From Octopus sinensis (taxonomy: Eukaryota): a DNA stretch of 64,000 bases. Numbering within the stretch: position 1 is the stretch's first letter; each line of letters starts with the position of its first letter. The notes below the pieces were generated by a model. It did no database searches and was not told the origin of the DNA. It worked only from the letters and a program-made list of their open reading frames with translations. The position numbers were made by a program, and so were the translations under genes. Where the stretch lies: NCBI RefSeq assembly GCF_006345805.1, contig NC_043006.1:11098001-11162000 (forward strand). The letters run 5' to 3'. Of the stretch, positions 25,332 to 53,740 are shown in pieces.

Positions 25332-25424
25332 ATATATATGTTTTAAATGATAATATGCTAATTGAATTTCAATTGCTCATCTTTTTTATACTTTATTCCC
25401 CTTATTTCTGTTGTTTACTTGCAG

Positions 25425-25648
25425 GATTATACCATAACGCTATATCTTAATCAGTATTGGATCGATGAGCGTTTAGTTTACTCAAACAATTCAGACGATA
25501 ATCTCACCCTGACTGGAGATTTTGCCGAAAACATCTGGGTGCCAGACACCTTCTTTGCCAACGATAAGAACTCGTTTCTACATGACATCACTGAGAAAAA
25601 TAAAATGATCCGATTGTTCGGAAACGGATCAATTGTTTACGGCATGAG
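25425..25648 (+). CDS. Lcch3: Internal coding exon (224 bp) of a Cys-loop ligand-gated chloride channel, GABA-A receptor beta-like subunit, extracellular domain
   Basis: ttgcag acceptor, then GAT TAT; translates DYTITLYLNQYWIDERL...FAENIWVPDTFFANDKNSFLHDITEKNKMIRLFGNGSIVYGM-R; ends AG|gtaagt. WxPDTFF and this exon span match GABA-A beta/Lcch3 from recall. Confidence 0.95.
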
Positions 25649-25714
25649 GTAAGTGTAAATAAACATTTTTTTTATTTAATCTTAAAGGACAAGTGACGCT
25701 TGCCCGCATACTCA

Positions 25715-26273
25715 TCTCTCTATATATAAACGGCAGTTTGTCTGTCTGTGTGTCTGTGTGTCTGTCAGGTTGTACCCTCACCCTGACCACGGCTTTCAAC
25801 CGATCCTGATGAAACTTGACACACACATAGCCCTCTCTATATATATAAACGGCAGTTTGTCTGTCTGTGTGTCTGTGTGTCTGTCAGGTTGTACCCTCAC
25901 CCTGACCACGGCTTTCAACCGATCTTGATGAAACTTGACACACACATAGCCCAATGTCATAATTCAAAACTAACGCAGTGAAAGTTTTGAAAAGTTCCCC
26001 CAGTTCTGAAAAAAATCGATAAATTCGACATTGGCTCGAGAATCTAAGCTTTTTATATGCAACACATTTTCTGTCTAGGGGACACAACTCGACCATTTTA
26101 TCGCCCAAAGGGACAGCTAGGAACATCGTATACACAGAAGTATTCGAGTGAAGAGAAGACATTGCAACCTACACATGCGCCTTCGTTCCCTAGAGGGAAA
26201 GGACTAGATTGGGATTAGTCGTTGCCTACTAGGGGCTCTTACATACCCGGGCAACGCCGGGCTATGCTGCTAG
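25715..26273 (+). mobile_element. Non-autonomous Helitron with duplicated 5' end
   Basis: A|TCTCTCTATATATAAAC start; CCCGGGCAACGCCGGG hairpin, then CTAG|T end; ~117-bp 5' segment repeated (25717-25833, 25834-25952). Confidence 0.85.
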
Positions 26274-27359
26274 TCCATCATAAATAACAGAAAATCTATG
26301 GCTTCGACATAAAACTCTTGTGATCAAACGTTGTAAATATTTCCTTAACGCCGAAGTGGATCCAATGTCGAAACAGTCGGACACATATCACAAACACTTC
26401 CTTTAATGACGTAATTTTAGGTTCTGAGTATAAAATTCCTCGGAGATCAATTGAATTTCTACTCGTTCGGGATTTGTTTGGGGTTATTTCTCTTTCTTTT
26501 TCTGTCTCCTTGTAGAGCGCTTAGTGAAAGATTAAACTTCACTTGTGGGACAATTTTGCTGATACTTTAAATTTCATGGAGTGGGAAAGGAAAAATATAC
26601 GAAATCTCATGGACTATTCTCGATCCCAATATTTGCAAAAGAGGGGAATCCACAAAATAGACACAGAGTCAATACAGAGGAGGTGAACTCGGCATCACAA
26701 ATTTCTTGTCTAAAATATGAATAATTCGGACTACGAAATTTTGTATATTTTCCATTTACCAAATTCGATCAGTAAAACTTGGAGCAACTCGGAACTATGA
26801 CAGAAAGCCCTTGGAATGATATCAAATTTAAAATGGGAACGGATGACTGCAAAACGAATTTCTGAAACACATAGTCGTTACGATATATCTGGCCTAACGT
26901 GATAACTATCGTTAGTTCTCGAAGCCTAACCTCAAGCTCGAGAATTATTCCATTAACTCCAATATACTTTGAGACAATGGTTTCCAGGTAAAACTTATTT
27001 CTACATGAAATCTTGGAGAAGTCCAAGTTATTACAGAAATATTTTGTTTATGTGTAAAATATCTCACCTTATCAGTGCACTACTTGACCCTTCAACTACT
27101 TGGCTCCTGTCGTTCCCAAACGCTTATCTGATCAGATTTAACATTGATAGATTGTACTTGGTAATTTGTGGTCAACCCATAAATATTCATTTAGATCAGG
27201 GTCATCATGAAGTCGAACACTTCCCTGTCCACAGGGGTCACTACTACAAACTAACACCACACGTATCACTTATTCTGTTGTTACAGAAGAATTGCATTTT
27301 CTTGTTTATCGTTTTGTTATGAGTATTTGAAATACGAGAATCAGTTGAAAGAATGAAAA

Positions 27360-27453
27360 CCAGATTCTTTCTCTCTCTTTCTCTCTCTCCCTCCCTCTCT
27401 CTCTTTCTTTCTCTCCATCTCTCTCTCTCTCTTTCTCTCTCTCCCTCTCTTTC

Positions 27454-27503
<50 letters not shown>

Positions 27504-27662
27504 CATCTCTCTCTCTTTCTCTCTCTCCCTCTCTCTCTCTTTCTCTTTCTCTCTCTGTCTATCTATCTATCTGTCTGTCTCTTCCCTCCTCTGTTTCGCT
27601 CTGTTTCAATTTGTCTCTTATTCTTTCCTTCGTGCACATATTCACACTCTCTCTATCTATCG

Positions 27663-27733
<71 letters not shown>

Positions 27734-27845
27734 CATCTATCTATCTATCCATCTATCTATCTATCTATCTATCTATCCATTTATCTATCTATCAATCTAT
27801 CTATTTATCTATCTATCTATCTATCTATTTATCTATCTATCTACA

Positions 27846-27896
<51 letters not shown>

Positions 27897-27932
27897 CTAT
27901 CCATCTATCTATCTATCTATCTATCTATCCAT

Positions 27933-27992
<60 letters not shown>

Positions 27993-28020
27993 TTATCTCT
28001 TTCTTTGTCTCTCTCTTTCT
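27360..28020. repeat. (CT)n followed by (CTAT)n microsatellite
   Basis: Direct reading. Confidence 0.95.
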
Positions 28021-28566
28021 ATAGACATATCTAATACCTATAAACATGTTTCCCTTTTATCTTGACCTCCATCTTCCCACTTATTCGCTTTACATTCAAT
28101 CTATTTCATTTCTTTTCACCCACTATCTTTCATCATCCTATCTAACCTCCATTCAATATTTTTTACACCCATCCAATTCTCTCTCTCTCTCTCCCTCACT
28201 CACTCTTTCTCACTCTTTCTGTCTTGAACTCCTTATCTTTACTCACTCATGTAATCTTTTTCTGTATCTATTACCACTTACTTTGTCTTGTTACTCCTCA
28301 CTCCTTCCAAAAATATTTTTTTAATATCCTCATAAATTCAATTACACATTCTGCATTACTTCTTCGAAAGTTAACGCATTATGAAACGTCAAAAATTCCA
28401 CAACTCCTCTCTACATACAGTTTTATCTTATTTTAAACTTTTGACATCTTTTCCTGCAGAGGTGGGAGCCAGCATAAATATTTCAAGTTTTTTGGGACTT
28501 GGCTAACAGTTCTATAATTGTTTATTTACAATTAAGTAAGCAAAGCAATCATAAGCAAAGCAATCA

Positions 28567-28990
28567 TAGGCGCAGGAGTGGCTGTGTGGTAAGTAGCTTG
28601 CTAACCAACCACATGGTTCCGGGTTCAGTCCCACTGCGTGGCATCTTGGGCAAGTGTCCTCTGCTATAGCCCCGGGCCGACCAATGCCTTGTGAGTGGAA
28701 TTGGTAGACGGAAACTGAAAGAAGCCTGTCGTATATATGTATATTTATATATATATGTGTGTGTGTGTGTATATGTGTTTGTGTGTCTGTGTTTGTCCCC
28801 CTAGCATTGCTTGACAACCGATGCTGGTGTGTTTACATCCCCGCCACTTAGCGGTTCGGCAAAAGAGATCGATGGAATAAGTACTGGGCTTACAAAAGAA
28901 TAAGTCCCGGGGTCGAGTTGCTCGACTAAAGGCGGTGCTCCAGCATGGCCGCAGTCAAATGACTGAAACAAGTAAAAGAGTAAAAGAGTA
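28567..28990 (+). mobile_element. SINE family A, full length
   Basis: Matches family A consensus. Confidence 0.9.
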
Positions 28991-29356
28991 ATAAGAACTC
29001 GACTTATTGTTTACAGAAGTAAACAATAGCAATACAGAAGTAAACAATAGCTGTCATTTTTCTCACTTCACCCTTCGCTAAAAACATTGTCCTCGATGAC
29101 TTCAACACTCATAAATCTTCTTGATTTTTACACGCATCCCTTATAAAGGGAACCTTTTTCGTCCCTGGCGTTTATCTCTGGCCGACATGCAGTCACACTA
29201 AATACCCTCCAACTTTTTTCTCCCTTCCACATTCAAACTCAACCTTAACTAAATTATCACTGCTTCTGCATTTATCAGAGCACCCAGTCACTGCCTTACC
29301 ACAACCACCCACAATATATCCACAACAAGGCAACACTTCCCACCCAAGACTCTCAT

Positions 29357-29522
29357 GTAGGCGCAGGTGTGGCTGTGTGGTAAGAAGCTTGCTTTCCAAC
29401 CACATGGTTCCGGGTTCAGTCCCACTGCGTGGTACTTTGGGCAAGTGTCTTCTACTACAGCCTCGAGCCGACCAAAGCCTTGTGAGTGGATTTAGTGGAC
29501 AAAAACTGAAAGAGAGCCGTGT
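29357..29522 (+). mobile_element. SINE family A, 5' half only
   Basis: Ends at the internal microsatellite. Confidence 0.85.
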
Positions 29523-29578
29523 ATACACATATATATAAATATATAAAAATATATATATATATATTATATATATATATA

Positions 29579-29665
<87 letters not shown>

Positions 29666-29814
29666 GTGAAATAGAAAGATGAATAATCTTGTAGTAGATT
29701 AATCAAAAGTTTAACCGATACCTTAGTAGCAAAAATCACAGCAGTAAACAGCACGGTTGGAGGTACAACCATCTGGCGTTACAACCGTGCGTTGGTGCGG
29801 ATAATTGAAATTAA

Positions 29815-29931
29815 AACATTATTGGTGAATTGAAGAAATGGAGCTGAACGCAGATTGAACAGAAATCGTTTTATAAAACGATTTCTGTTCAATCTGCGTT
29901 CAGCTCCATTTCTTCAATTCACCAATAATGT

Positions 29932-29932
<1 letters not shown>
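29815..29932. repeat. Perfect 118-bp spacerless palindrome
   Basis: Centre CGTTTTA|TAAAACG at 29873/29874; arms match by eye along their full length. Confidence 0.95.
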
Positions 29933-29962
<30 letters not shown>

Positions 29963-30149
29963 GTATGTATATATGGTCCTTTTCCATACCGAAATACTAC
30001 TAGGTGAAATTTGTTGATTTTATTAAATTAATTATCATTCACCCTATATCTGTAATGAGTATGTACATAGTGAATCCAAACAAAGAAGAACAAACAAGAA
30101 AACACAATAACAGATTTTATGGACATCGTTCATAAGGCTGATATAATCG

Positions 30150-30945
30150 TTTGTCCCCTTTTTCCGCAAGTTATGCGTTTGCTGTCTGAGTTTAATTAAT
30201 TGTTGTCATGGCTTGCTCATGAACGGCTGTGTTTAGGGATTCAGTTTCTCTTTTCAAGTTTCCAGTTTTCAGCCACAACCAGCTTTTTTCACTTTAAACT
30301 TCTCTAGTTTCTTGCACAAATTACCTATGCTGTTCCTTCATTTTCTAGCGATTTTGGTGTTATACTTCTCCCCTTTCTTGAAATCTTTGTTTCAATGACT
30401 TTCGTGACATTCCTAGCTGCATACAGCTAACCGTGACTAACATAGTTTCCCAAAACCCAAATTAGCAGCATGTTAGACACTTTTGGCATTTAACAATTCT
30501 CAACCTCCTTCTCTTCTTTATTACTAGAACCTATCGATATTACTTTAAGGATGCTCTATATAATGTATCCTGAGCGGATTCCAATATCTGTAGCTATGTC
30601 TTCGTCTGTTTTAAAAAAAGAGCGGAATTTCTCGACATGACATAACCCGAGTATTGATCAATTTAGTTATATGAAAAAAAGCAATGGAGACAGTAAGTCT
30701 CCTTGCAATAGTCCCCTCAGAATTTTTCTACATTTCTCGCCAATTTGCTTCTGCGATTTTTGTTCCATTTCCCAAGTTCTTGTCGCTTTCTCTGAAAGCA
30801 AAGACGTTAATCTTTCCCTAGACCCCGGGGGTATTCTGACAGCTGAAAAGCCCATGTTGTGGTACATTATTACATGCGTTCTCGTATTGCATCCTATCAA
30901 TAGCAAAGTTTTTTTTTTATCTGCAATTAACATTGTAACCATTAA
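30150..30945 (-). pseudogene. Degraded R4/Dong-type non-LTR retrotransposon, RT and post-RT region
   Basis: RGLLQGDLLSPLLFFI (RT motif) and KSWLWLKTGNLKRETESL...HEQAMTT; stops and frameshifts present. Confidence 0.75.
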
Positions 30946-30978
30946 TCGATAGACGATAGATGAATATTATCATTATCA

Positions 30979-31038
<60 letters not shown>

Positions 31039-31039
31039 C

Positions 31040-31490
31040 CATGTTTATCGCATAAGATTTCCGAAATTAACTTTGTAATAATACGTCATCCGTCCGCAAC
31101 CTGTGGGCTAAGGTAACATATTACGGTCAGATTTCGTGAACTTTACGAAGTATTCGTATAGTTCTAAGCCACACTGCTTTGTGTAGGGGCTATATCTTCA
31201 CATTTACCCTTTTCAATCCGGTTTTTTAGCTTGGTACTTATAGCACCCAAGGCTCCCACAACAACATGCATAACTTACTTCAGTGAAGCCAGTCTTTCTA
31301 TTTCCCATTTCAAATCAACTCATCTGATCTGTTTCTTCTCTTTGATTTCTGATATTCTATAATCACCAGGACATCCAATGTCTATGATTAAACAGGTTTT
31401 TACCTCTTTATCCACAACCACTATATCCGGCTGTCGATGTTCGTTTTCATGGTCACGTTCGAGCATTGCTTCCATAAATACCCTTATCTG
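31040..31490 (-). pseudogene. 3' end of an R4/Dong-type element (restriction-like endonuclease, 3' UTR, (AAT)n tail)
   Basis: HRQPDIVVVDK...CLIIDIGCPGD and LRTIRILRKVHE, followed by (AAT)n at 30965-31038. Confidence 0.8.
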
Positions 31491-31519
31491 ATTCTTAATC
31501 GTTATTACTACTCATAAAC

Positions 31520-32075
31520 AGGGGTGAGCTGGCAGAATCGTTCGCAGGCTGAACGAAATGCTTAGCGGTATTTCATCCGTTGCTACGTTCTGAGTTCAAA
31601 TTCCGACGAGGTGGACTTTGCCTTTCATCCTTTCGGGGTCGATAAATTAAGTACCAGTTACGCACTGGGGTTGATGTAATCGACTTAATCCGTTTGTCTG
31701 TCCCTGTTTGTCCCCTTTGTGTTTAGCCCCTTGTGGGTAGTAAAGAAATAGGTATTTCGTCTGCCGTTACGTTCTGAGTTCGAATTCCACCGAGGTCGAC
31801 TTTGCCTTTCATCATTTCAGGGTCGATAAATTGAGTACCAGTTCGCACTGGGGTCGATATAATCGACTTAATCCATTTCTCTGTCCTTGTTTGTCCTTTT
31901 TTTTTTTGCACCTTGTGGGTAGTAAAGAAATTGGTATTTCATTCGTCGCTACGTTCTGAGTTCAAATTCTTTCGGAGTCGAGGAAATAAGTACCAGCTGA
32001 ACACTGGGTTCGATATAATCGACTAACCTCCTCTCCCAAATTTCAGGCTTTGTGCCTATAGTAGAAAGGATTATT
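31520..32075 (+). mobile_element. SINE family B, three-unit tandem form
   Basis: Units start at 31568, 31752 and 31934. Confidence 0.9.
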
Positions 32076-32704
32076 ACTACTAATAATACTGTAAATTTCT
32101 ACGCCTACCGCGCTGAAAATAGAATCTTTTGATTTATTTGTGTCACATATCCGGCAGGAACTAAATTAATTCGTTTCAGCCATTCCGATGACTGGAGTTC
32201 AGGATTCACAGATTATAAGAAAATAAAATATGGTCCTATTGGAAAATAAAGAATATTGGAGAGGAGATATCAAACAAATATACTAAGTTTAAATATGGCG
32301 TTTTAATATCGCACTGCATTACACCAAAATCTAATTTACACCAGAGACGACTGCCTGAATTCATGAACATATTACTTTGTGAAGTTATAAGGAACTGTTC
32401 TAAACAGATACGTTCAGGCTGAAAGAAAGAAAAGTTATTATTTCTTGCTTAAAACACCAAACATGGCAGCCAATAATGGCGGTCGATACATACGCTGATC
32501 AAATACAAAGAAAAAAAGGAAAGTGAAAGTTATTGATCCGCCGAGCGTATGAACTTATTCTTAATTGCTTTCTTATCTGTAAATATCGATGTTTTCACAT
32601 TCTGATATCTAAATACATACTTTGTCATTATGGCTGTATTTACATCTATTGTGACTGTATTTATCAGAGTGAACAAATTTACGTAAACATATATGTATAT
32701 TTAC

Positions 32705-32792
<88 letters not shown>

Positions 32793-33155
32793 TTATACAT
32801 GTTTACATGTATATTTACGACTATGTCTTTCTCTTTCTCTCTCTTTCTCTATATATATATGTATATATGTATATATATATATACATACATACATATATAT
32901 ATAATATATATATATATATACATATACATATACTAAAGTTTATGTTAAAGTGTATTTCTGTGTATGTGAGAATGTGTGCGTGTGCGTGTGTGCATGTATG
33001 TCTGTCAGTCTGTCTGTCTGTGTGTGTATGTATGTATATATATATACATAGTGTATGTTTCTGGGTATATGTGTATGCGTTCGTATATATATATTCATAT
33101 ATGTAGGATATACATATAGACATACAACCTTACATGCACACACACGTACACACGT

Positions 33156-33188
<33 letters not shown>

Positions 33189-33590
33189 CATATATATATA
33201 TGCCATATAGGTAACTTACATAAAAATATCAATAGGAGTATTTTTGCATAAACATATATGCACATGCATATATAAATAGAAAGTTAGATAGATAGATAAG
33301 TAGATAGATAGATATATATATAGAGAGAGAAATGAAAGAGAAAGAAATAGAAGATAGATGTAGGCTCGTGCACATGTATGTGTGTGTGTTTGTATGTGTG
33401 CGTATGTGTGTATGTGTGTATGCCAGTATGACTAAGTTTGATATGCAAACGAACTGCATATTCGGATGTCTGATCGATTATGGCGTCGGGATCTTCATGC
33501 GTAATGCCTATGTCTATCTCTGTGTGTAACTCGTATATGTATACGTATTTTATGCGCGAATGTGTACGCGTTTATACACACACACACACA

Positions 33591-33673
<83 letters not shown>

Positions 33674-33860
33674 CATTGCAGGCGTGTATGTATTTAACTC
33701 TATTTTCAGTCCTCCAACATTACTGATTCACTGTTTAATTGTATCAATTTCATACAGATATATTCTCTGTAGATCTAAATAGCAACACATACAAACACAC
33801 ACACACGCATAGACACACGCTCAGATGCACATACACACACACATACATATACATATATAT

Positions 33861-33896
<36 letters not shown>

Positions 33897-34269
33897 GATA
33901 TATATATATATAGATATATATATATATATGTATAGGTATATATATATGAGTATATATATAGATAAATATATATTAATACATATATATGTATAGGTATATA
34001 TATAGAAGTATGCATATGTATATATATGTATATGTATGCATATATATATATATATACATATATGATATATATATATAGGTAAATATATATAGATATATAT
34101 ATATATGTATAGGTATATATATGAGTATATATATAGATAAATATATATTAATACATATATATGTATAGGTATATATATAGAAGTATGCATATGTATATAT
34201 ATGTATATGTATGCATATATATATATATATATACATATATGATATATATATATGTATATATATATATAT

Positions 34270-34303
<34 letters not shown>

Positions 34304-34378
34304 ATATAATATATATATTTATAAATATATATATATATATATAATATATATATATATATGTGGTGTGTGTGTGTGTGT

Positions 34379-34412
<34 letters not shown>

Positions 34413-34844
34413 ACATGTATTTATATAGCTTCTTTTTGATTCAGAAAGATAAAAGTTGTCTAAATTGCCAATTCTACGTATGGTATCAACATTATCAAAT
34501 ATTTATGATATACAGGAGTTCTTCCAAAATATTCATTTTCCATCTCACAGGACATCTGATAATACCTCACTTCTCTCAGGTAATCTATCACCAATGCACA
34601 TAAAATGAAACAGAACAAAAACTATTTCTAAGAAAATCACATCTTTTCTCGACTCTGCACACAATCCTCATAAAGTAGAGCTATTATTTTTCTCTAATAT
34701 CCAAAAACCACATTCTCTCAGTATGTTTCTTACACCTACGTAAATCCATATTAACTGATTCTTAAACTGGAATACTGATTGTTTTTTTCCTTGAGAATTT
34801 ATTTTACTTTAAAATATTTTAATTTCGCCACAAGGACAAATATT

Positions 34845-35030
34845 TTGAGAGAATAGGCATAGTCGATTATAACGACCCCATTACTTGAAAGATATTTTAT
34901 TTTAATGAATCTGAAAGAATAAAATATCAAGAAATATCAAATTCACCTTGATGTTGTTCAAACTCGAGACAATGACCGGAAAGAAATACCGCAAATCATT
35001 TTTTTCCGGCGATTTAATGATTCTGCTTGG
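34845..35030 (-). mobile_element. Old degraded SINE family B
   Basis: GTCGATTATAACGACCCC and GAAATACCGC remnants. Confidence 0.55.
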
Positions 35031-35448
35031 TTGCAGCCATTTAGTTTTAAAATAAGCGTATCAATTATTTGAGACGACCACTAAATTTTACTGGTAAATA
35101 TTTCGAATTGCTTCTCCACTCTTAACGGATAACTGAGAAATTGCACGTTCTGTACAGCCAGAAATCCTATATGAAACCGCTTCTTCTATTATGAATATCA
35201 GCCAAATTTCCCTTAGGGAACATCCTAGTCTTCTAAATAAAGAAACGGTACTTTAGACAGATGCAGTGAACAGAGCTGGAATATCTTTGATCAGAGTCGA
35301 CCTGGGGCTAAGAGAACAACATCAGTAACACTGTATCAAATCAAGGAATTAAATGCTGTAATATGTTGGGTCAGCCATTTTATTCACTTAGATATCTGCG
35401 GCGTCGCTGACTAATGCAGCATAAAATATAAAGCAACTGTTGAGGGAG

Positions 35449-35454
<6 letters not shown>

Positions 35455-35532
<78 letters not shown>

Positions 35533-35543
35533 CAGAGAGAGAC

Positions 35544-35606
<63 letters not shown>

Positions 35607-35609
35607 GAA

Positions 35610-35653
<44 letters not shown>

Positions 35654-35668
35654 GACAGACAGACAGAC

Positions 35669-35745
<77 letters not shown>
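35455..35745. repeat. (GATA)/(GA)/(GACA)n compound microsatellite
   Basis: Direct reading. Confidence 0.95.
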
Positions 35746-36602
35746 TGCATATCTTCTTGGAACATTACCAATATTAACAAATCACCACGCTCCGGGAGGT
35801 TTTCTACTCTCTGCTGCCTATTATGATAATGTTTACTAAATTCCGACAAGTCTGATGAGAAAAAATTGCCAGGCGTTGAAAAGTCTACCAAAGCTGCTTT
35901 ACGTCTATTTTATTATTTATGTAAATATAGAGATTTCAGCCAATTCTTTAAAATATCCAATAAAAAGACGTGGAACTTTATAAAAAAATTGCAACACTGT
36001 TACATTTTGAATAAATTTTTAATTTGGATTTACATTTTTATCTTTTTTATGTAACGTATTTCGTTCAGTAGACTTCAGAAAAAAAAATTCTTATTTTATG
36101 TCTGTAAATATATCCTGACATAAACTGTAGGATCATTCGCAGTCATATTAAATAACTCAGTTTGGAGGGTGTTTCTCCTGAAGTCCTTGGTTCTATCCGA
36201 GGTTTGCTATGTCAAGGGTGATTTGGGAGTATGCTCGATGCTTTCGCTAATTGTTTTATTTGCCCATTTAGTTGCGAGTGGACATAGACAGCCTCTTGGC
36301 CCTGCCTTTTTTGATCTATTAAAACATCCAAAGTCGGACACCTGAAAGGAGAGTGTACTTAGAGCAGTACGCGTTTGGTTTTAGCTTTATCGACCCAGTA
36401 AAAATGTAAGCCAAAAGTTGGATTCGGCTAAATTTGAGCAAGGAGCACGGGGAGATGGTACAAACATAGCAACACTTTTCACGTGATGGTCAAAAGTCTC
36501 TGATAGACGACCGTCATTGGCATGTGCTGTCATCACAGGATGCACAAGAGAAACTGAAAATGACCGCCGTTGAATTCTATTGGCAGCAGTAAAAATAAAA
36601 AA

Positions 36603-36885
36603 AAACTGGCACTCCGTCAGTTACGACGACGAACATTCCAGTTGATCCGAGGTACGGGAGAGCCTGCGCGTGAAATTAATGTGCAAGTAGCTGTGCACTC
36701 CACAGACACGAATACCCTCACGTAGTTTTCATGAAAATTCAGCGTCACACAGAATGTGACAAGGCTGGTCCTTTCAAATACAGGTACTACTTATTTTCGC
36801 CAGCTGAGTGGACTGGATCACCATGAAATAAAGTCTTGCTCAAGGACACAACGCCCCACTACGAATCGAACTCATGACCTTCCGT
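36603..36885 (-). mobile_element. SINE family D
   Basis: Homologous to 2826-3140. Confidence 0.85.
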
Positions 36886-37221
36886 GCCTTCACAGCTATA
36901 TGCCAGTAGAAACAAAGACCCACGACCACCTTACCCTCCAAAACGAATGAACCTTGTTTCGGCAAATTCCCTGTTTACTGACTTTCGTTAATGCTTTAGT
37001 TATCTTGCATTTTTAGTACAATCCTGTTGTAATGAAAGTATTTAAGTGGAGATGGTCACGGATATAATAATACGAGTATTTAATTGGAGATTTCATGGGT
37101 ATAGTAGCAATATTATTTAATGTACGATGGTAATAGCTGTGGATTTAAGAAGGTCGCCTCGCATCTATATGTTTTTTGGTTCAATACCCCGTCAAGTCAC
37201 TTTAAAAAGTATGTTCTAAAG

Positions 37222-37475
37222 CAGCGGTCCTCCAACATTTTCTGCCTATGGTCCCCCTTTCATTCTTATTTTACTCAGCTGGACCCTCGTAGCCATTCCA
37301 TGTTTAAAAAAAAACATTACATTATATTTTTAGAACTAATTATCATAAGGAATTGTATAAAGACAATGGTTAAAATATTTTGTACATTATAGAATTATAA
37401 CTAATTTCTTGCACATAAAATTTACCAATACAATTTTATATGAATCTCCAAGAGCCATATGGACCCCACTAGGCT
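37222..37475 (+). mobile_element. Probable hAT-type MITE, left part
   Basis: Begins CAGCGGTCCTCCAAC after TTCTAAAG, resembling hAT/Charlie termini; right TIR not found. Confidence 0.4.
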
Positions 37476-38288
37476 AATTCTTCTGAGCGATGAAGTCCTT
37501 CTGGGGTAAATTTGGTAAATTGGATCCGTTGAAAGTTCTCTGGAGGGAGTGTTTCTGTTTTGGGGTTGCATATTTAATCCCTCTTTCCATCAGGCCCGTT
37601 GGTGACTTAATTTTTTTGCGCCCCAGTGTAAGGATGGCTTCATCTTTTCCACCTATCGTGGGAGATTCCGGAAAAAAGGTCATGAGTTCTACGCTTTCTT
37701 TTTTAACAAAGTAAAAAAGAAAGAAATCAAAATAATTATGAAAAAAATCTATAAATGTTCTCTTTACAACAATCCATATTTCGAAAGAGAAGAGCGTCCA
37801 CAGTAGCATATACATGCCAATCAATAATATAGATTTACATTTGTACAACTCCATGTTTTATTCAGAAAACATTACTGAAATCAGAAATCGAAATAAAACC
37901 AATGTACTTTTGCATGTTTGGGCTTCAGATATTTTCGGTAATTCTGATAGAAAGTCACAGCCTGCCATATCAATCGGGTTGAATACTGACCAATAGAGCT
38001 TGAAAAATTCAATAGCGGATTGCTGGATTATAATCCTTTATCTCTTGAGAATGCTAACATTGTATCATTAGGAAGGTGCTGATTCTGCAAAAAATTGGTA
38101 AAATGCCTGGCTGAATCCTTTTAAAGCATTTGAATTTGTTTCTTCCACGTTTTGGTCCATTGCTACGGTGTCGGTCGATTCTCTGATTTCATGGAGCTAT
38201 TCCTTAATTATTGTTGTTAAGAAAAATAATATTTCATATTATGTATGCTGGCAAGAACAAAAAAAAAATCTTAAACTATTACATTATC

Positions 38289-38712
38289 AGGCGCAGGAGT
38301 GGCTATGTGGTAAGTAGCTTGCTAACCAACCACATGGTTCCGGGTTCAGTCCCGCTGCGTGGTACCTTGAGCAAGTGTTTTCTGCTATAGCCTCGGGCCA
38401 ACCAAAGCCTTGTGAGTGGATTTGGTAGACGGAAACTGAAAGAAGCCTGTCGTATATATGTATATATATATATGTATGTGTGCTTGTTTGTGTGTCTGTG
38501 TTTGTCCCCCTAGCATTGCTTGACAACCGATGCTGGTGCGTTTACGTCCCCGTCACTTAACGGTTCGGCAAAAAGAGACTGATAGAATAAGTACTGGGCT
38601 TACAAAAAAAGAATAAGTCCCGGGGTCGAGTTGCTCGACTAAAGGCGGTGCTCCAGCATGGCCGCAGTCAAATGACTGAAACAAGTAAAAGAGTAAAAGA
38701 GTAAAAAAGAGT
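38289..38712 (+). mobile_element. SINE family A, full length
   Basis: Matches family A consensus. Confidence 0.9.
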
Positions 38713-39461
38713 ATTATATCTCAATCCAGTTAGTGGAACAGGAAAATGCACGCTACTCACCACTGTGGTCGAGTTGACTTGGAAATCCCTAGCAATTATG
38801 TAACCTTCACTTTAATGCGACAATTCCAGCCTGATGATTAGCTTTTGGAGAGCTTAACTCATTGCATAACTATTACATCAAAAGGTTCAGCTAGATAAAA
38901 AAACATGTAGCGTGCATTTTACCTGTTCCATTCTACTCCTTCAATTCGGATTTTTATTCACATTTGTAGTAGTTTTAGTGGCTAACTTGAGCTATAGAGG
39001 AACTATCAGCTTATCGAATTTCCTCGTACCTTCGATGCGAGAACTTCGATGTGCAAACCGCGATGCCAATAGATTGTTAGTGCTTCTTATCGCAAACTGT
39101 CCACTGTTTGTTCTCTATACCTGGCATACACTCGGATCACTGGATCATATATATGTGTATATATATGTGTGTGTGTGTGTGTGTATGTGTGTGTGTGTGT
39201 GCATGTATGTATATAGGCGCAGGAGTGGCTGTGTGGTAAGTAGTTTGCTTACCAACCACATGTCGTCGTAGCATCTTATTCTGGCAGCACGCTGGCGGGA
39301 GGGGGGTGGTGACATACTTTCATTCACCCTTTGAATTTGGTGGTACTGGTAAAGGCTTACGCTCGCTCTGATACCATGAGTTGAGGTGATGTCTTCTAGT
39401 GCCGTCAAATTTAATACACAATTATTAATAATTGAGACGCAATTATTTATAATTGAAGAGT

Positions 39462-39552
39462 CCTACGCTGAAGAGAAAAATAGTTGGGTAAGACATAATT
39501 ATTTAATTTTTATGCTTTCCTATGACTTAATTTCGAAACGTACGTCCGTAGG
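39462..39552 (+). ncRNA. Type I hammerhead ribozyme, intact core, GUC cleavage site
   Basis: CCTACG/CGTAGG stem I, CTGAAGA, stem II closed by GAAA/TTTC, GAAA, palindromic stem III ACGTACGT, C17 at 39546. Confidence 0.82.
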
Positions 39553-39833
39553 TGACTTAATATAGAATGATTGTCGTCATTTCTTTCTCTTTTGCCTGCG
39601 TTGTTTGCCTTTTAAGTGCTGTGGTTTTACTGGGATCTCCCTTTTAAGTAGAAAGAATAGCCATAACTCTTTGACTGCTATTTCTAAATTCGGTGTGTGG
39701 TGAGGCAAATCGTTGCTAAACCCTTAATTACTTAGTATTACTTAAACCTTCCTTGAATGGGGCTTTTACATGCCGAAATCTACTTGGTGAAATTAATGAT
39801 TATTCCAAATTAATTAATTTCACCCTATATTAT

Positions 39834-39868
<35 letters not shown>

Positions 39869-39884
39869 GTATGTATTTGTATGT

Positions 39885-40088
39885 TTGTCTCTGTTTGTCC
39901 CCCCAGCATCGCTTCACAACCGATGGTGGTGTGTTTATGTGCCCATAACTTAGCGGTCCGGCAAAAGAGAGCCGATAGAATAAGTACTAGGCTTACAAAG
40001 AATAAGTAGTCCTGGGGGTCGATTTGCTCGACTACAGGCGGTGCTCCAGAATGGCCACAGTCAAATGACTGAAACAAGTAAAAGAGTT
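39885..40088 (+). mobile_element. SINE family A, 3' half (an isolated 5' stub lies at 39214-39262)
   Basis: Matches family A 3' half. Confidence 0.85.
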
Positions 40089-40174
40089 AAAGACTATTGA
40101 GCGCCATACTAATACAATTGTTCGTTTGTTTTCCACCTGCCTTCGTCTTTTGTTTATTTTCATAAAGCTTCCCG

Positions 40175-40252
<78 letters not shown>

Positions 40253-40266
40253 TATATATGAGCAAC

Positions 40267-40533
40267 TTATAAAGAAGGGCAAAAGAAAAAATTATAATGC
40301 CAAATATGCCGAAAATCGACTTAAGTCGTCAATAACCATATAATTCATCACTATAAGCACACGTCTCGAAGTACGCTGACAGAAATTTCAAAAAATTCCG
40401 TTATTATCGTATCGGTTCCGATTTCAGACTTCGAGACGTGTGCTTATAGTGATGAATTATATGGTTATTGACGATTTAAGTCGATTTTCGGCATATTTGG
40501 CATAAATTTCTTTTCTTTTGCCCTTGTTTATAA
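40267..40533. repeat. Inverted repeat, ~106-bp arms and ~55-bp spacer
   Basis: 40267-40372 is near reverse-complementary to 40428-40533. Confidence 0.9.
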
Positions 40534-40669
40534 ATTTAGCCTTTAAAGGTATTTTTTAATATGCTGGCCATTGATAGAATTTTTTTCGAAAAGTTTTATC
40601 CTATATTAGATGCATATATATATATATATATCTGTGGTGGGGTAGTCAAGTCGAATACTAAATCTAGAA

Positions 40670-40830
40670 CAAACAATCAAACATTAAAAATAACAATAAC
40701 AAAACAAGGGGACGGACATTTGGAATGTATTATTTTAACGCTCACGTTAAGGTGGAAAGAAGAGTAGGTTTTTAACGTTTCGAGCATAGCTCTTCGTCAT
40801 AAAGGAAAACGGAAAAGTCCAGAAAGTAAA
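40670..40830 (-). mobile_element. PLE LTR-like repeat with hammerhead-like motif (ATGACGA core variant)
   Basis: Minus strand ATGACGA-A-GAGCTATGCTC-GAAACGTT at 40770-40805. Confidence 0.6.
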
Positions 40831-41344
40831 ACGTTTCACGAACAGCATGTGTGTGATTACATGACAATAGTGCTAAAATGTGTGCGTATGTGTGCGTGTG
40901 AATATATATGGATACGCAGAAACAGCGTCGAACACCTGACTTATCGTAGGCTTAAAACAATTTACGTAATGCGAAACTGAGTTAAACTACTATTGAATAG
41001 ATGGGTCTTCCAGCCAAACGTGCTGAATACTACTTTCTTTCGTTTGTTCATGCCCTTATGTGTTTGCATAAGTGTGCGTGTGTATGTGTCTTTGTCTGCG
41101 TGGGGAGGGTGTCAGCAATTTTTAATAATTATCATCGTAACATAGGCTATATGTATATGTATATAATTAGTAGTGTGTTCAAGTTAGCGCATGCGTATAG
41201 ATGTTGAAATATGTATCGTTTCAGTTGTTACACTGTCTTGTGCACACATTTGCGTTTATTTATACATATGCATGAGAATTACGGGATTCTATGTGCGTAT
41301 ATACATATGTATATATATATGTATATATATATATATATATATAT

Positions 41345-41404
<60 letters not shown>

Positions 41405-41910
41405 TATATATATATATATATATATACAGAGAGAGAGAGACATGTGTATGCAAGAGTTTTGAGTATGCGTGTATGTATGTATTTGTATAAGTGTATATCA
41501 TCATGTACTTATGTAGAGTTTATATGCCTGTATATATAAAAGTGTGTGTGTGTGTAGTTTGCACGTGATCTTGTGTGTGCGTGTGTGCGCATGCTTGTGT
41601 CGTATACTTGTGTATTAGTAACTCCCATTCTCCATTTTGAAAACACATTAATATATGTATACATGCTTGTATTATGTCTGTAATTATATATGCATGTATG
41701 AATAAATGTGCATGTATATATATTTATACATGTATGTGTATACATATATATAAGTATATATATATACACACATACATAAATATATACACACATACATATA
41801 TATATAAATATATACACACATACATATATATGCATATATATATATGTACATATATATGTATGTATATATATATATGTGTGTGTATGTATATATAAATATA
41901 TATATATATG

Positions 41911-41964
<54 letters not shown>

Positions 41965-42330
41965 ATATATATATATTTATACATATACATGCATGTGCAT
42001 GTGTGTTCGTATGTGCTGTGTGAGATTCCGTACATGTCTATGATCACGTGTATAGGCTTATGTTATGAATATATTCGTATGTAAGTGCGTTTTTCTACAC
42101 AAGAGACATTTCAATATAGAATATTTAGCTCGGAGCTAAATACTTAAGAATGCTCAAAATGTTAATTAAAGTCTAGTGTAATTCTTTGGAGAAATTTTTC
42201 ATCGATTTTTTTTCCAACCTTATATTGCTTGCTTTATTTAATTTCTATTTATCTTTCCTTTAATTCTTAGAACATTTTTCCTGTGTGTTTTTGTAATAAT
42301 TTGCTCTTTTTGTAATAATTTGCTCATCAC

Positions 42331-42387
42331 CTTCTTCTTCTTCTTCTTCTTCTTCTTCTTCTTCTTCTTCTTCTTCTTCTTCTTCTT

Positions 42388-42432
<45 letters not shown>
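42331..42432. repeat. (CTT)~19(CTA)~15 microsatellite ~190 bp upstream of the Cys-loop exon
   Basis: Direct reading. Confidence 0.97.
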
Positions 42433-42433
<1 letters not shown>

Positions 42434-42619
42434 AACTGCTTCTTCTTCTTCTACTTCTTCTATTTCATCTTCTATATCTTTTTCTTCAACTTCTCCTTTA
42501 TCTCACATCCTCTCTCCTACGAAATAAATGACATTAGCTTCTGATTGAAATATCCCCACTGAATTATGTGAATTGTCTCTTAGTCATCTATTTCGTTTCG
42601 TTTCATTTCTTTAAAACAG

Positions 42620-42702
42620 GTTTACAACAACCTTGGCCTGCATGATGGATTTGCATTATTATCCACTAGATGTCCAGAATTGCACGGTAGAAGTTGAAAG
42701 CT
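42620..42702 (+). CDS. Lcch3: Next coding exon (83 bp), encoding the Cys loop of the same GABA receptor beta-like subunit
   Basis: aaacag acceptor; phase joins the previous exon (AG+G = Arg); reads [27 protein letters not shown], then T|gtgagt donor. C-x13-C loop. Not in the ORF track because it is too short. Confidence 0.96.
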
Positions 42703-43769: not shown

Positions 43770-44385
43770 GTGAACTGGCAGAATCGTTAGCACGCCGGGC
43801 GAAATGCTTAGCGGTATTTCGTCTGCAGCTACGTTCTGAGTTCAAATTCTGCCGAGGTCGACTTTGCCTTTCATCCTCCCGGTGTCGATTAAATAACTAC
43901 CAGTTACGCACTGGGGTCGATATAATCGACTTCATCCGTTTGTCTATTCTTGTTTGTCCTCTCTGTGTTTAGCCCCTTGTGGGTAGTAAAGAAATATGTA
44001 TTTCGTCTGCCATTACTTTCTCAGTTCAAATTCTGCCGAGGTCGACTTTGCCTTTTATCCTTTCGGGGTCGATTAAATAAGTACTAGTTACGCACTGGGG
44101 TTGATATGATAGACTAAGTCCGTTTGTCTGTCCTTGTTTGTTCCCTCTATATTTAGCCCCTTGTGGGCAATAAAGAAATAAGTATCGTTAGCACGCCGAG
44201 CAAAATATTTAGCAGCATTTCGTCCTTCTTTACGGCCTGTGTTCAAATTCCACCGAGGTCGACTTTGCATTCCATCTTATAGTGGCTGTTAAAATAAGCG
44301 CAAATTGAGCACTAGCGTCGATGTAATCGATTTACTCTCTATCTCGAAACTTCTGGCCTTGTGCCAAAATTTGAAATGAATATTA
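43770..44385 (+). mobile_element. SINE family B, three-unit tandem form
   Basis: Units at 43814, 43998 and ~44183. Confidence 0.9.
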
Positions 44386-47130: not shown

Positions 47131-47539
47131 TTTCTCTCTTTTCTCTTTTACTTGTTTCAGTCATTTGACTGCGGCCATGCTGGAGCACCGCCTTTAGTCG
47201 AGCAAATCGGCCCCGGGACTTATTCTTTGTAAGCCCAGTACTTATTCTATCGGTCTCTTTTGCCGAACCGCTAGGTGACGGGGACGTAAACACACCAGCA
47301 TCGGTTGTCAAGCAATGCTAGGGAGACAAACACAAACACACAAACACATACATATACATATATATACATATATACGACAGGCTTCTTTCAGTTTCCGTCT
47401 ACCAAATCCACTCACAAGGCATTGGTCGGCCCGGGGCTATAGCAGAAGACACTTACCCAAGATGTCACGCAGTGGGACTGAACCCGGAACCATGTGGTTG
47501 GTTAGCAAGCTACTTACCACACAGCCACTCCTGCGCCTA
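47131..47539 (-). mobile_element. SINE family A, full length
   Basis: Reverse complement of family A. Confidence 0.9.
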
Positions 47540-53720: not shown

Positions 53721-53740
53721 TTTTTTATTTATATACTATA

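What the first reader, a model, noticed from the sequence alone, without database searches (positions are those of the whole stretch)
39462..39552. Apparently intact hammerhead ribozyme on the sense strand of a GABA-receptor intron
Seen: all conserved core nucleotides (CUGAAGA, GAAA, GUC), a perfect 6-bp stem I CCUACG/CGUAGG that extends past a UG bulge (GAGU/ACUU), a 60-nt stem II closed by GAAA/UUUC, and an 8-nt palindromic stem III ACGUACGU. Established: minimal type I hammerheads with palindromic stem III occur in Penelope-like LTRs and retrozymes and often cleave as dimers. Inference: the pre-mRNA could be cut after C39546 inside the 17-kb intron between the two exons, affecting splicing or output of this neural gene.
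Basis: partly seen in the sequence, partly recalled or inferred. Interest (0 to 1): 0.82.

Follow-up and report, generated by a model that had tools for sequence, protein, structure and literature searches.

The report
Solitary hammerhead ribozyme motif in octopus intron
A complete hammerhead self-cleaving RNA motif does sit on the sense strand of a 17-kb intron of an octopus GABA-A receptor beta-like gene, but it looks like cargo of a mobile-element fragment, a kind of sequence common in animal genomes, and nothing here shows that it regulates the gene.

Summary
Positions 39462-39552 (+) carry a type I hammerhead: core CUGAAGA and GAA, an A15.1-U16.1 pair, a GUC cleavage triplet (cut after C39546), a 6-bp helix I with a 4-bp extension, a 60-nt helix II with a GAAA/UUUC base, and a palindromic helix III, ACGUACGU. 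Rfam Hammerhead_1 matches it at 25 bits, below the 34-bit gathering score. Chance is very unlikely (about 2e-5 per window). The host gene is a GABA-A beta-like subunit, and the motif lies on the sense strand of intron 25649-42619.

The motif sits in a 563-bp block that replaces about 115 bp, including the apparent B box, of a SINE copy. It is therefore secondary, most likely a fragment of a hammerhead-bearing retroelement (a non-LTR retrozyme monomer or a Penelope-like pLTR).

Its function in the gene is doubtful:
- Helix III is unstable as a monomer (+1.7 kcal/mol, P=0.04).
- No partner copy lies within 64 kb.
- Loop 2 is replaced by a 52-nt AU-rich arm.
- Published work shows splicing tolerates slow intronic hammerhead cleavage.

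Genome copy number and conservation across octopods could not be tested. Verdict: a real motif, an ordinary new member of a known kind, with the functional inference unsupported.

The parts
39458..39461 (+). Helix I extension, 5' strand (GAGU)
   Evidence: Pairs with ACUU 39555-39558 in the MFE and centroid folds. Pair probabilities are 0.6-0.9.
39462..39467 (+). Helix I, 5' strand (CCUACG, positions 2.6-2.1)
   Evidence: Six Watson-Crick pairs with 39547-39552. Rfam alignment.
39468..39474 (+). Catalytic core C3-U4-G5-A6-A7-G8-A9 (CUGAAGA)
   Evidence: Sequence. Aligned to the invariant CUGAnGA of RF00163.
39475..39534 (+). Helix II, 60 nt: a 4-bp base (G10.1-C11.1 plus three A-U pairs), then an internal loop and a 52-nt imperfect AU-rich hairpin in place of loop 2
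   Evidence: Folds. Scored as a 56-nt insertion by Rfam. The interior contains a third copy of a local 21-nt AT-rich motif.
39535..39537 (+). Core G12-A13-A14
39538..39545 (+). Helix III, ACGUACGU (A15.1...U16.1): 2 bp plus a GUAC loop as a monomer, a perfect 8-bp duplex as a dimer
   Evidence: Monomer hairpin +1.7 kcal/mol with pair probability 0.04. Intermolecular duplex -9.8 to -11.2 kcal/mol. Dimer cofold -48.4 versus 2 x -18.0 kcal/mol.
39546..39546 (+). C17. The predicted scissile bond is 3' of this base (GUC|C).
   Evidence: Position in the motif. Cleavage itself was not tested.
39547..39552 (+). Helix I, 3' strand (CGUAGG, positions 1.1-1.6)
39553..39558 (+). UG bulge and ACUU, the 3' strand of the helix I extension
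39581..39597 (+). Pyrimidine tract that can pair with the purine-rich core and the 5' strand of helix II (a competing fold)
   Evidence: Duplex -12.8 kcal/mol. Helix I probability drops to 0 in windows that start at 39400 and run past 39600. It is 0.89 when the whole block from 39263 is folded.
39263..39825 (+). 563-bp carrier block holding the hammerhead. It has 37.5% GC, no ORF of note, no internal unit-length repeat, and is unique in the window.
   Evidence: It replaces about 115 bp of SINE consensus in the alignment with four other copies. No other match in the window. Internal repeats are only 10-21 nt.
39213..39262 (+). Head of the interrupted SINE copy (contains the A-box-like segment)
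   Evidence: 92-96% identical to the heads of copies at 28566, 38285, 47540(-) and 53737.
39826..40093 (+). Tail of the same SINE copy, starting at its internal (TA)n/(TATG)n tract
   Evidence: 85-88% identical to the tails of eight other copies. This host copy is 8.1% from the consensus, against 1.6-4.3% for the others.
25424..25648 (+). Upstream exon of the GABA-A beta-like subunit gene (DYTITLY...VYGM/R)
   Evidence: Pfam Neur_chan_LBD E=7e-16. AG acceptor and GTAAGT donor. Identical to P0003.
25649..42619 (+). The 16,971-nt intron that contains the hammerhead, which lies 13.8 kb from the 5' splice site and 3.07 kb from the 3' splice site
   Evidence: Splice-site sequences. The two exons join without a gap against GABA-A beta3.
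42620..42702 (+). Downstream exon (Cys-loop: [28 protein letters not shown])
   Evidence: (Pfam E=4e-7).

Best explanation
This is a genuine descendant of the type I hammerhead ribozyme lineage. It has the canonical metazoan architecture: a 6-bp helix I, a 4-bp base of helix II, a 2-bp helix III with a palindromic loop, and every core nucleotide intact. It is carried as cargo on a 563-bp fragment of a hammerhead-bearing retroelement, most likely a solitary monomer of a non-LTR retrozyme or a fragment of a Penelope-like-element pLTR. That fragment inserted into an older SINE copy inside intron 25649-42619 of an octopus GABA-A receptor beta-like gene and deleted about 115 bp of the SINE.

In its native element, such a ribozyme processes multimeric element transcripts into unit-length RNAs. 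It does this through a double-hammerhead in which two copies share the palindromic helix III.

Here it is solitary. As a monomer its helix III is unstable, no partner lies in cis, and loop 2 is replaced by a long AU-rich arm. It is therefore expected to cleave the pre-mRNA after C39546 slowly or not at all, with little effect on receptor output. Its intactness reflects a fairly recent insertion rather than host selection.

Shown:
- the motif itself
- its significance against chance
- strand, gene and intron
- its secondary position within the SINE
- the monomer and dimer energetics

Inferred:
- the retroelement family
- low activity
- lack of host function
For: - The motif is complete and matches Rfam Hammerhead_1 over the full model.
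- Chance expectation is 2e-5 to 3e-7 per window.
- The block replaces the SINE middle, including the stretch that looks like the B box (GGTTCCGGGTTCAGTCCC). Four other copies in the window are continuous there, so the block arrived after the SINE.
- The host SINE is the most diverged copy, 8.1% from consensus. Yet none of the roughly 35-45 constrained hammerhead positions is broken, which fits a younger insertion.
- The block's 3' junction lies at the SINE's internal (TA)n tract. Some Penelope-like elements are reported to prefer microsatellite and (TA)n targets (PMC8557442).
- Monomer helix III is +1.7 kcal/mol with P=0.04. The dimer gains about 12 kcal/mol through an 8-bp helix III.
- No second copy was found in the window.
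- A decayed Penelope-like element lies in the same window at 52682-53645(-). Its homologs carry RVT_1 plus a C-terminal GIY-YIG domain. It is 70% identical at the DNA level to an O. bimaculoides copy.

Literature:
- Canonical metazoan type I hammerheads have exactly this 6/4/1-2-bp layout with a palindromic loop 3 and act as dimers. Most copies are dispersed single motifs from truncated elements (PMC4209133).
- Type I hammerheads belong to non-LTR retrozymes (PMC7229834), which are related to Penelope-like pLTRs. Their monomers are dispersed, and about 43% overlap introns in Xenopus (bioRxiv 10.64898/2026.07.22.740005).
- 235 Hammerhead_1 loci were annotated in the giant squid genome (PMC6962438).
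- Introns cut by a slow hammerhead still splice (PMC2995048, PMC2288634).
Against: - No second member of the 563-bp block's family was found anywhere I could search: the window, 12 fetched loci, JGI metagenomes and the protein-ORF collection. Assignment to a repeat family therefore rests on the insertion geometry and on the literature, not on observed copies.
- No target-site duplication, RT/EN ORF, tandem unit or poly(A) marks the block.
- The block shows no similarity to the Penelope-like remnant in the window.
- Invertebrate hammerheads with a 2-bp helix III can cleave as monomers. The coral retrozyme reaches about 0.8 per min, and the mussel about 0.1 per min even without canonical loop contacts (PMC7229834). 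Low activity is therefore not certain.
- An internal loop in helix II after 4 bp and a bulge in helix I after 6 bp sit where tertiary contacts normally form.
- When the whole block is folded, helices I and II dominate (P about 0.9).
Confidence: 0.6

Rival explanations
1. Domesticated intronic ribozyme. The hammerhead is retained by selection and cleaves the GABA-A beta-like pre-mRNA to tune splicing, isoform choice or transcript yield in neurons. It would be an invertebrate counterpart of the amniote RECK, CTCL and DTNB intronic hammerheads.
For: - Sense strand, complete core, G10.1-C11.1 and a GUC triplet.
- All constrained positions are intact inside an 8%-diverged SINE.
- Helices I and II are predicted with P about 0.9 in the whole-block context.
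- Precedent exists for domestication of retroelement hammerheads in introns (PMC6155905).
Against: - No evidence of conservation could be obtained. The gene spans 480 kb in O. sinensis and 235 kb in Argonauta hians, so no DNA was returned.
- The motif rides on a secondary insertion.
- Helix III is unstable and has no cis partner.
- Slow intronic hammerheads do not block splicing (PMC2995048).
- Intronic retroelement hammerhead copies are commonplace (bioRxiv 10.64898/2026.07.22.740005).
Confidence: 0.06
2. Chance resemblance. An AT-rich intron happens to contain the short core boxes and complementary flanks.
For: - The Rfam score is below the gathering threshold (25 versus 34 bits).
- The fold energy is not exceptional (z = -0.79).
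- A loose descriptor finds a second, poor motif at 51949-52028(-) inside a palindromic element.
- Loose descriptors would yield hundreds of hits per genome (0.01 per window).
Against: - Expected counts for this quality of match are 2.4e-5 per window by Rfam rescaling and 3e-7 by composition.
- Features not forced by any descriptor are all present: G10.1-C11.1, the 8-nt CpG-rich palindrome, the GUC triplet, the 6/4/2-bp canonical geometry and the helix I extension.
Confidence: 0.03
3. The block is a module of a chimeric SINE subfamily that carries its own hammerhead, as the Schistosoma Sm-alpha SINE does. On this view it is not an independent insertion of a retrozyme or Penelope-like fragment.
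For: - The block is bracketed, in order and in orientation, by the head and tail of one SINE.
- Hammerhead-bearing SINE-like retroposons exist (PMC6155905).
Against: - At least eight other copies of the SINE in the window lack the block.
- The replaced segment contains the apparent Pol III B box (my reading of the consensus), so such a chimera could not be transcribed like the parent SINE.
- No second chimeric copy was seen.
Confidence: 0.07
4. Dead relic. The 52-nt AU-rich interior of helix II is a later local duplication or insertion into loop 2, and it has already inactivated a once-canonical hammerhead.
For: - The interior of helix II (39488-39508) resembles two tandem 21-nt AT-rich near-palindromes just upstream at 39411 and 39432. 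Fifteen of 34 aligned columns are invariant.
- Rfam expects about 10 nt here.
- Canonical loop 1-loop 2 contacts need a loop 4 bp from the core (PMC4209133).
Against: - The similarity is short and AT-rich and may be chance.
- Helix II length is not in itself critical for catalysis, and the 4-bp base is intact with P about 0.85-0.9.
- An internal loop remains at the right distance from the core.
Confidence: 0.2

Closest known systems
Canonical type I hammerheads of metazoan non-LTR retrozymes (coral, mussel, axolotl; PMC7229834)
   Same: - Type I topology and a full core.
- A 6-bp helix I, a 4-bp helix II base, and a 2-bp helix III with a palindromic tetraloop ("similar to invertebrate HHRs").
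- Low-GC carrier sequence (37.5%).
- Mollusc host.
   Different: - Not in a 170-400-bp tandem array. There is one copy in 64 kb and no unit-length repeat inside the block.
- Loop 2 is replaced by a 52-nt arm.
- circRNA expression is unknown.
Minimal hammerheads in the pLTRs of Penelope-like elements (PMC4209133)
   Same: - Dispersed, mostly solitary copies derived from truncated retroelements.
- Palindromic 15.2-16.2 and loop 3 region, implying dimeric action.
- Conserved G10.1-C11.1.
- Low expected activity.
- A Penelope-like remnant is present in the same window.
   Different: - The min-HHRs lack helix III or nearly so, have a 7-8-bp helix II and a 4-5-bp helix I, and carry an unpaired nucleotide between A9 and 10.1. 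None of these holds here.
- No RT/GIY-YIG ORF adjoins the block.
[quoted passage not shown]
   Same: Type I motif on the sense strand of an intron of a protein-coding gene, thought to derive from retroelement hammerheads.
   Different: Those are defined by deep conservation at the locus. Here conservation is untested, and the motif sits on an evident secondary insertion.
Newt and axolotl satellite hammerheads acting as double-hammerheads (PMC7229834)
   Same: Weak helix III with a palindromic loop. The dimer is predicted to be much more stable than the monomer.
   Different: Those sit in long tandem arrays, which supply the partner in cis. This copy has no partner.
Sm-alpha SINE-like retroposon of Schistosoma carrying a type I hammerhead (PMC6155905)
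   Same: A hammerhead physically embedded in SINE sequence.
   Different: Here the hammerhead block interrupts the SINE and deletes part of it, and the block is absent from the other copies.

Membership tests
Hammerhead ribozyme, type I (Rfam RF00163) | Invariant core C3-U4-G5-A6-N7-G8-A9 and G12-A13-A14 | tested here: met
   CUGAAGA at 39468-39474 and GAA at 39535-39537.
Hammerhead ribozyme, type I (Rfam RF00163) | A15.1-U16.1 pair and a non-G nucleotide at cleavage position 17 | tested here: met
   A39538, U39545 and C39546, giving a GUC triplet.
Hammerhead ribozyme, type I (Rfam RF00163) | Three helices around the core, with helix I open and helices II and III closed (type I order) | tested here: met
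   The order is helix I 5' strand, core, helix II hairpin, GAA, helix III, C17, helix I 3' strand. Helices I and II are predicted with P about 0.9 in isolation. Helix III forms only weakly as a monomer (P=0.04).
Hammerhead ribozyme, type I (Rfam RF00163) | Score at or above Rfam's curated gathering threshold (34 bits) | tested here: not met
   25.0 bits, and no hit in gathering mode. The shortfall coincides with the 56-nt helix II insertion.
Hammerhead ribozyme, type I (Rfam RF00163) | Site-specific self-cleavage giving 2',3'-cyclic phosphate and 5'-OH ends | not testable with these tools
   Needs in vitro transcription or end mapping.
Metazoan non-LTR retrozyme | Canonical type I hammerhead geometry: helix I about 6 bp, helix II about 4 bp, helix III 1-2 bp with a palindromic loop | tested here: met
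   6 bp, a 4-bp base, and 2 bp plus GUAC. Compared with the descriptions in PMC4209133 and PMC7229834.
Metazoan non-LTR retrozyme | Head-to-tail tandem repeats of about 170-400 bp, each with one hammerhead | tested here: not met
   Single copy, with no tandem array at the site and no internal unit repeat. Solitary monomers of such families do exist (bioRxiv 10.64898/2026.07.22.740005).
Metazoan non-LTR retrozyme | Conserved loop 1-loop 2 tertiary-contact nucleotides | tested here: inconclusive
   Loop 2 is replaced by an internal loop and a long arm. Helix I has a UG bulge after 6 bp. Mussel retrozyme hammerheads also lack the archetypal contacts (PMC7229834).
Metazoan non-LTR retrozyme | Multiple related copies in the genome and expression as small circular RNAs | not testable with these tools
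   No octopus genome or transcriptome could be searched at the DNA level. ORF-based look-ups found nothing.
Penelope-like element pLTR hammerhead (min-HHR) | Located in a direct repeat flanking an RT plus GIY-YIG ORF | tested here: not met
   No RT or EN ORF lies in or next to the block. The only Penelope-like remnant is 13 kb away on the other strand and is unrelated in sequence. A truncated solo pLTR cannot be excluded.
Penelope-like element pLTR hammerhead (min-HHR) | Minimal architecture: helix III absent or nearly so, helix II 6-8 bp, helix I 4-5 bp, and an unpaired nucleotide between A9 and 10.1 | tested here: not met
   An 8-nt helix III element is present, helix I is 6 bp, and there is no extra nucleotide after A9 (compared with PMC4209133).
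Domesticated intronic hammerheads (RECK/CTCL/DTNB type) | Sense-strand position within an intron of a protein-coding gene | tested here: met
   Intron 25649-42619 of the GABA-A beta-like gene, + strand.
Domesticated intronic hammerheads (RECK/CTCL/DTNB type) | Conservation of the motif at the orthologous locus across distant species | not testable with these tools
   The orthologous genes were located in O. sinensis and Argonauta hians, but their ranges (480 kb and 235 kb) exceed the limit for DNA retrieval.

The most novel reading that the evidence does not exclude
The hammerhead is catalytically active in vivo, perhaps aided by the helix II internal loop and the helix I bulge, or by pairing between nascent transcripts. 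It is conserved at this intron position across octopods as a domesticated ribozyme that modulates processing of a GABA-A beta-like receptor pre-mRNA in the nervous system. That would make it the first invertebrate counterpart of the amniote intronic hammerheads.
Probability: 0.04. Interest if true: 0.7.

Novelty: new member of a known kind. Interest (0 to 1): 0.22.

Why it matters
If it is only retroelement cargo, as I think, it matters little. It is one more of the hundreds to thousands of hammerhead motifs that retrozymes and Penelope-like elements scatter through animal genomes, many of them in introns.

It has modest value in three ways:
- It shows that canonical type I hammerheads occur in octopus. 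I found no study of cephalopod retrozymes in the searched library.
- It is an example with an unusually long helix II, which default Rfam thresholds miss.
- It is a clean, testable case for asking whether solitary sense-strand intronic hammerheads ever cut host pre-mRNAs.

Only if it proved conserved and active would it bear on the open question of what intronic hammerheads do.

Tried and rejected
- Rfam in gathering mode on the whole window gave no hits. The whole-window E-value scan was swamped by microsatellite-driven miRNA matches and was uninformative.
- Searches for a second copy or a dimer partner in the window found none. These used exact and mismatch patterns, BLAST and my own descriptor. 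The one extra descriptor hit, 51949-52028(-), has a 4-bp helix I and a 2-bp helix III with a 2-nt loop, and lies inside a palindromic MITE-like element. I rejected it as chance.
- I tried to find family members through ORFs overlapping the block: exact look-ups and a homology search of the 59-aa ORF spanning the hammerhead, plus 20 other window ORFs. None is in the collection.
- A metagenome pattern scan, CTGANGAG-N(30-60)-TCGAAACGTACGTC, returned four hits. Three are GC-rich and bacterial-like, none has a helix I, and the number is about what chance would give.
- Synteny was attempted. I located the orthologous genes with an X-padded exon query, but the gene ranges were too long for DNA retrieval. 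Two 54-aa entries in the same cluster turned out to be unrelated proteins.
- I tried to reach octopus Penelope-like pLTRs through the Penelope-like remnant. A padded homology search found nothing. A representative search found 219 homologs. The fetched loci were one O. bimaculoides region, Logan contigs and ENA contigs. None contained a hammerhead or any similarity to the block.
- ARAGORN found no tRNA-like genes.
- CpG content is not depleted in this window (observed/expected 0.89), so CpG retention in the motif says nothing about its age.

Full report
**1. The observation**

- CCUACG (39462-39467) and CGUAGG (39547-39552) form a 6-bp helix I.
- CUGAAGA (39468-39474) is the C3-A9 core strand.
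- 39475-39534 is a 60-nt helix II. Its base is G10.1-C11.1 followed by three A-U pairs.
- GAA (39535-39537) is G12-A14.
- ACGUACGU (39538-39545) is a perfect 8-nt palindrome that begins with A15.1 and ends with U16.1.
- C39546 is position 17, so the predicted cut is GUC|C.
- GAGU (39458-39461) pairs with ACUU (39555-39558) beyond a UG bulge.

The isolated 101-nt RNA folds into helix I, its extension and helix II in both the MFE and the centroid structure.

Rfam's Hammerhead_1 model (RF00163) aligns over its full length to exactly 39462-39552, with 25.0 bits and E=5e-4 for the 311 nt searched. This is under the curated 34-bit gathering score, so the default scan is silent. The alignment shows the cost lies in a 56-nt insertion in helix II, where the model expects about ten nucleotides.

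**2. Is it chance?**

Rescaling the Rfam E-value gives about 2.4e-5 expected matches of this quality per 64-kb window and about one per 2.7-Gb genome. A composition-based calculation gives 3e-7 per window and 0.013 per genome. That calculation covers a motif with this core, G10.1-C11.1, three more helix II pairs, a 6-bp helix I and any 8-nt self-complementary helix III.

A deliberately loose descriptor is far less specific, at 0.01 hits per shuffled window. It also picks up one poor second candidate at 51949-52028(-), inside a long palindromic element, which I discount.

I conclude that the motif descends from a real hammerhead lineage.

**3. Gene context**

ORF 25362-25652 and a stop-free segment at about 42.6 kb both hit Pfam Neur_chan_LBD. 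Joined, they align without a gap to residues 80-181 of human GABA-A beta3 (E=3e-38). They are 100% identical to the annotated GABA receptor beta subunits of Octopus sinensis (XP_029641547.1), O. bimaculoides and Argonauta hians.

Splice signals place the exons at 25424-25648 and 42620-42702, and the intron at 25649-42619, with a GTAAGT donor and an AG acceptor. The hammerhead is therefore on the sense strand, 13.8 kb from the donor and 3.07 kb from the acceptor.

**4. What carries the motif**

The window holds at least nine copies of a roughly 440-bp SINE. One copy has its head at 39213-39262 and its tail at 39826-40093, in order and in the same orientation. Its central roughly 115 bp is replaced by a 563-bp block (39263-39825) that contains the hammerhead. 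The replaced stretch runs from GTTCCGGGTTCAGTCCC, which I read as the Pol III B box of a tRNA-derived SINE, to the internal TA tract.

The block is otherwise unremarkable:
- It occurs nowhere else in the window.
- It has 37.5% GC.
- It has no meaningful ORF.
- It has no unit-length internal repeat.
- It has no recognisable target-site duplication.

Its 3' junction lies at the SINE's (TA)n tract. Some Penelope-like elements favour such targets (PMC8557442).

The host SINE is the most diverged of the five copies aligned, at 8.1% from the consensus against 1.6-4.3%. The roughly 35-45 constrained hammerhead positions are all intact. At 8% divergence, the probability of that for 35 sites would be about 0.05. 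The simplest reading is that the block arrived later than the SINE, not that the motif is under selection.

A decayed Penelope-like element lies at 52682-53645(-). Its C-terminal ORF has weak GIY-YIG Pfam hits and 219 homologs. The long homologs carry RVT_1 followed by GIY-YIG. It is 70% identical in DNA to a copy in O. bimaculoides. It is unrelated in sequence to the hammerhead block and has no hammerhead nearby. It therefore shows only that such elements have been active in this genome.

**5. How it would work**

The layout matches what Cervera and de la Pena call the canonical metazoan type I hammerhead: a 6-bp helix I, a 4-bp helix II base, and a 2-bp helix III capped by a palindromic tetraloop (PMC4209133). 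This form was later assigned to non-LTR retrozymes (PMC7229834). It does not match the min-HHR of Penelope-like pLTRs, which has no helix III, a longer helix II, a shorter helix I and an extra nucleotide after A9.

In their native tandem arrays, these ribozymes cut multimeric transcripts into units. Motifs with weak helix III do so as double-hammerheads that share an extended helix III.

The energetics here fit that picture:
- The monomer helix III hairpin costs +1.7 kcal/mol and has a pair probability of 0.04.
- Two copies cofold at -48.4 kcal/mol, against -36.0 for two monomers, with an 8-bp intermolecular helix III worth about -10 kcal/mol.

This copy has no partner within the 64-kb window.

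Two further features argue against efficient cleavage:
- Loop 2, which normally contacts loop 1, is replaced by an internal loop and a 52-nt AU-rich arm. The interior of that arm resembles two 21-nt AT-rich repeats just upstream, so it may be a later duplication.
- The purine-rich core can pair with a pyrimidine tract at 39581-39597 (-12.8 kcal/mol). This abolishes helix I in folding windows that start at 39400. Helix I is restored (P=0.89) when the G-rich 5' part of the block is included.

Folding therefore neither refutes nor endorses an active conformation.

On the other side, invertebrate hammerheads with a 2-bp helix III can cleave as monomers. The mussel retrozyme, which lacks the archetypal loop contacts, still reaches about 0.1 per min (PMC7229834). 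Some activity cannot be excluded.

**6. Consequence for the host gene**

Even if the motif cleaves slowly, published work in mammalian cells shows two things. Introns cut co-transcriptionally by a hammerhead are spliced about as well as intact ones. Only a fast ribozyme aborts processing (Dye et al. 2006 and Fong et al. 2009, as summarised in PMC2995048; tethering is also noted in PMC2288634).

In Xenopus, about 43% of retrozyme-derived copies overlap introns (bioRxiv 10.64898/2026.07.22.740005). The giant squid genome was annotated with 235 Hammerhead_1 loci (PMC6962438). A sense-strand intronic hammerhead is therefore not remarkable in itself.

**7. What could not be tested**

No tool gave DNA-level access to an octopus genome.

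- *Synteny.* I located the orthologous genes, but their ranges (480 kb in O. sinensis, 235 kb in Argonauta hians) exceed the retrieval limit.
- *Family copies through ORFs.* ORFs overlapping the block are absent from the protein collection.
- *Metagenomes.* A pattern scan returned only four chance hits without a helix I.
- *Fetched loci.* About 43 kb of fetched loci held no relative of the block.

Genome copy number and conservation across octopods, the two facts that would decide between relic and domesticated ribozyme, remain open.

**8. Verdict**

The best explanation, at a confidence of about 0.6, is a solitary hammerhead carried by a retroelement fragment. The fragment inserted into a SINE within the intron, and the motif is probably weak or inactive and neutral for the host.

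It is a new member of a known kind, with an unusually long helix II. Interest is low to modest.

Noticed in passing
window 52682-53645 (-): Decayed Penelope-like element. Four ORF pieces lie in different frames, and the last (52682-53020) is a GIY-YIG endonuclease domain. It has 219 homologs, and the long ones have RVT_1 plus a C-terminal GIY-YIG. It is cut off at its 5' side by a SINE at 53740. It is 70% identical in DNA to an O. bimaculoides copy (L005). Related ORFs also occur on Logan contigs from runs SRR118693xx, whose organism and library type I did not check.
   Followed up: yes
window 51890-52270 (-), motif at 51949-52028: A roughly 380-bp element with long terminal and internal inverted repeats (MITE-like or foldback). 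It contains a hammerhead-like string: CUGACGA, a 55-nt helix II, GAAA and a 4-bp helix I. Helix III is only 2 bp with a 2-nt loop, and position 17 is U. Probably chance.
   Followed up: partly
window 56891-56998: A perfect palindrome of about 100 nt, forming a 48-bp hairpin with dG -89.6 kcal/mol and z = -18. It matches dozens of unrelated miRNA models on both strands, all below their thresholds. It could be a young foldback or MITE, or an assembly artefact. It is not a credible miRNA call.
   Followed up: partly
window 28551-28987, 38265-38700, 47137-47562(-), 53740-54131 and at least five more: An abundant SINE of about 440 bp. It has a tRNA-like head (sequences resembling A and B boxes), an internal (TA)n/(TG)n tract and a conserved 3' half. 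ARAGORN calls no tRNA. Copies are 85-98% alike.
   Followed up: partly
window 43814-44185 and 47857-48407: A 184-bp unit in tandem: two copies at 86% identity and three copies at 94%. It contains a T-arm-like segment, GTTCAAATTCCGCCGAGGTCGAC. It may be a second SINE-like family amplified in tandem. My descriptor finds no hammerhead in it.
   Followed up: no
window 39411-39452 and 39488-39508: A 21-nt AT-rich near-palindromic motif, T[AG]A[TG]AC..AATTATT[AT]A. Two copies lie in tandem just upstream of the hammerhead and a third lies inside helix II. This hints that the long helix II arose by local duplication.
   Followed up: partly
window 30667-30942 (-): An ORF fragment with a reverse-transcriptase-like motif (GLLQGDLLSPLLF), probably a LINE remnant. 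There is no Pfam hit at E<=0.1.
   Followed up: partly
window 8516-9422 and 11641-12253: Long imperfect trinucleotide arrays, (ATC/ATG)n type, which produce spurious ORFs of up to 269 aa on both strands. Together with the pervasive TA/TG/TAGA microsatellites, they dominate every repeat and E-value RNA scan of this window.
   Followed up: no
protein cluster of P0003 (database, not the window): The 90%-identity cluster of the octopus GABA receptor beta subunit also lists two unrelated 54-aa metagenome proteins, P0121 and P0132. This appears to be a clustering artefact.
   Followed up: yes
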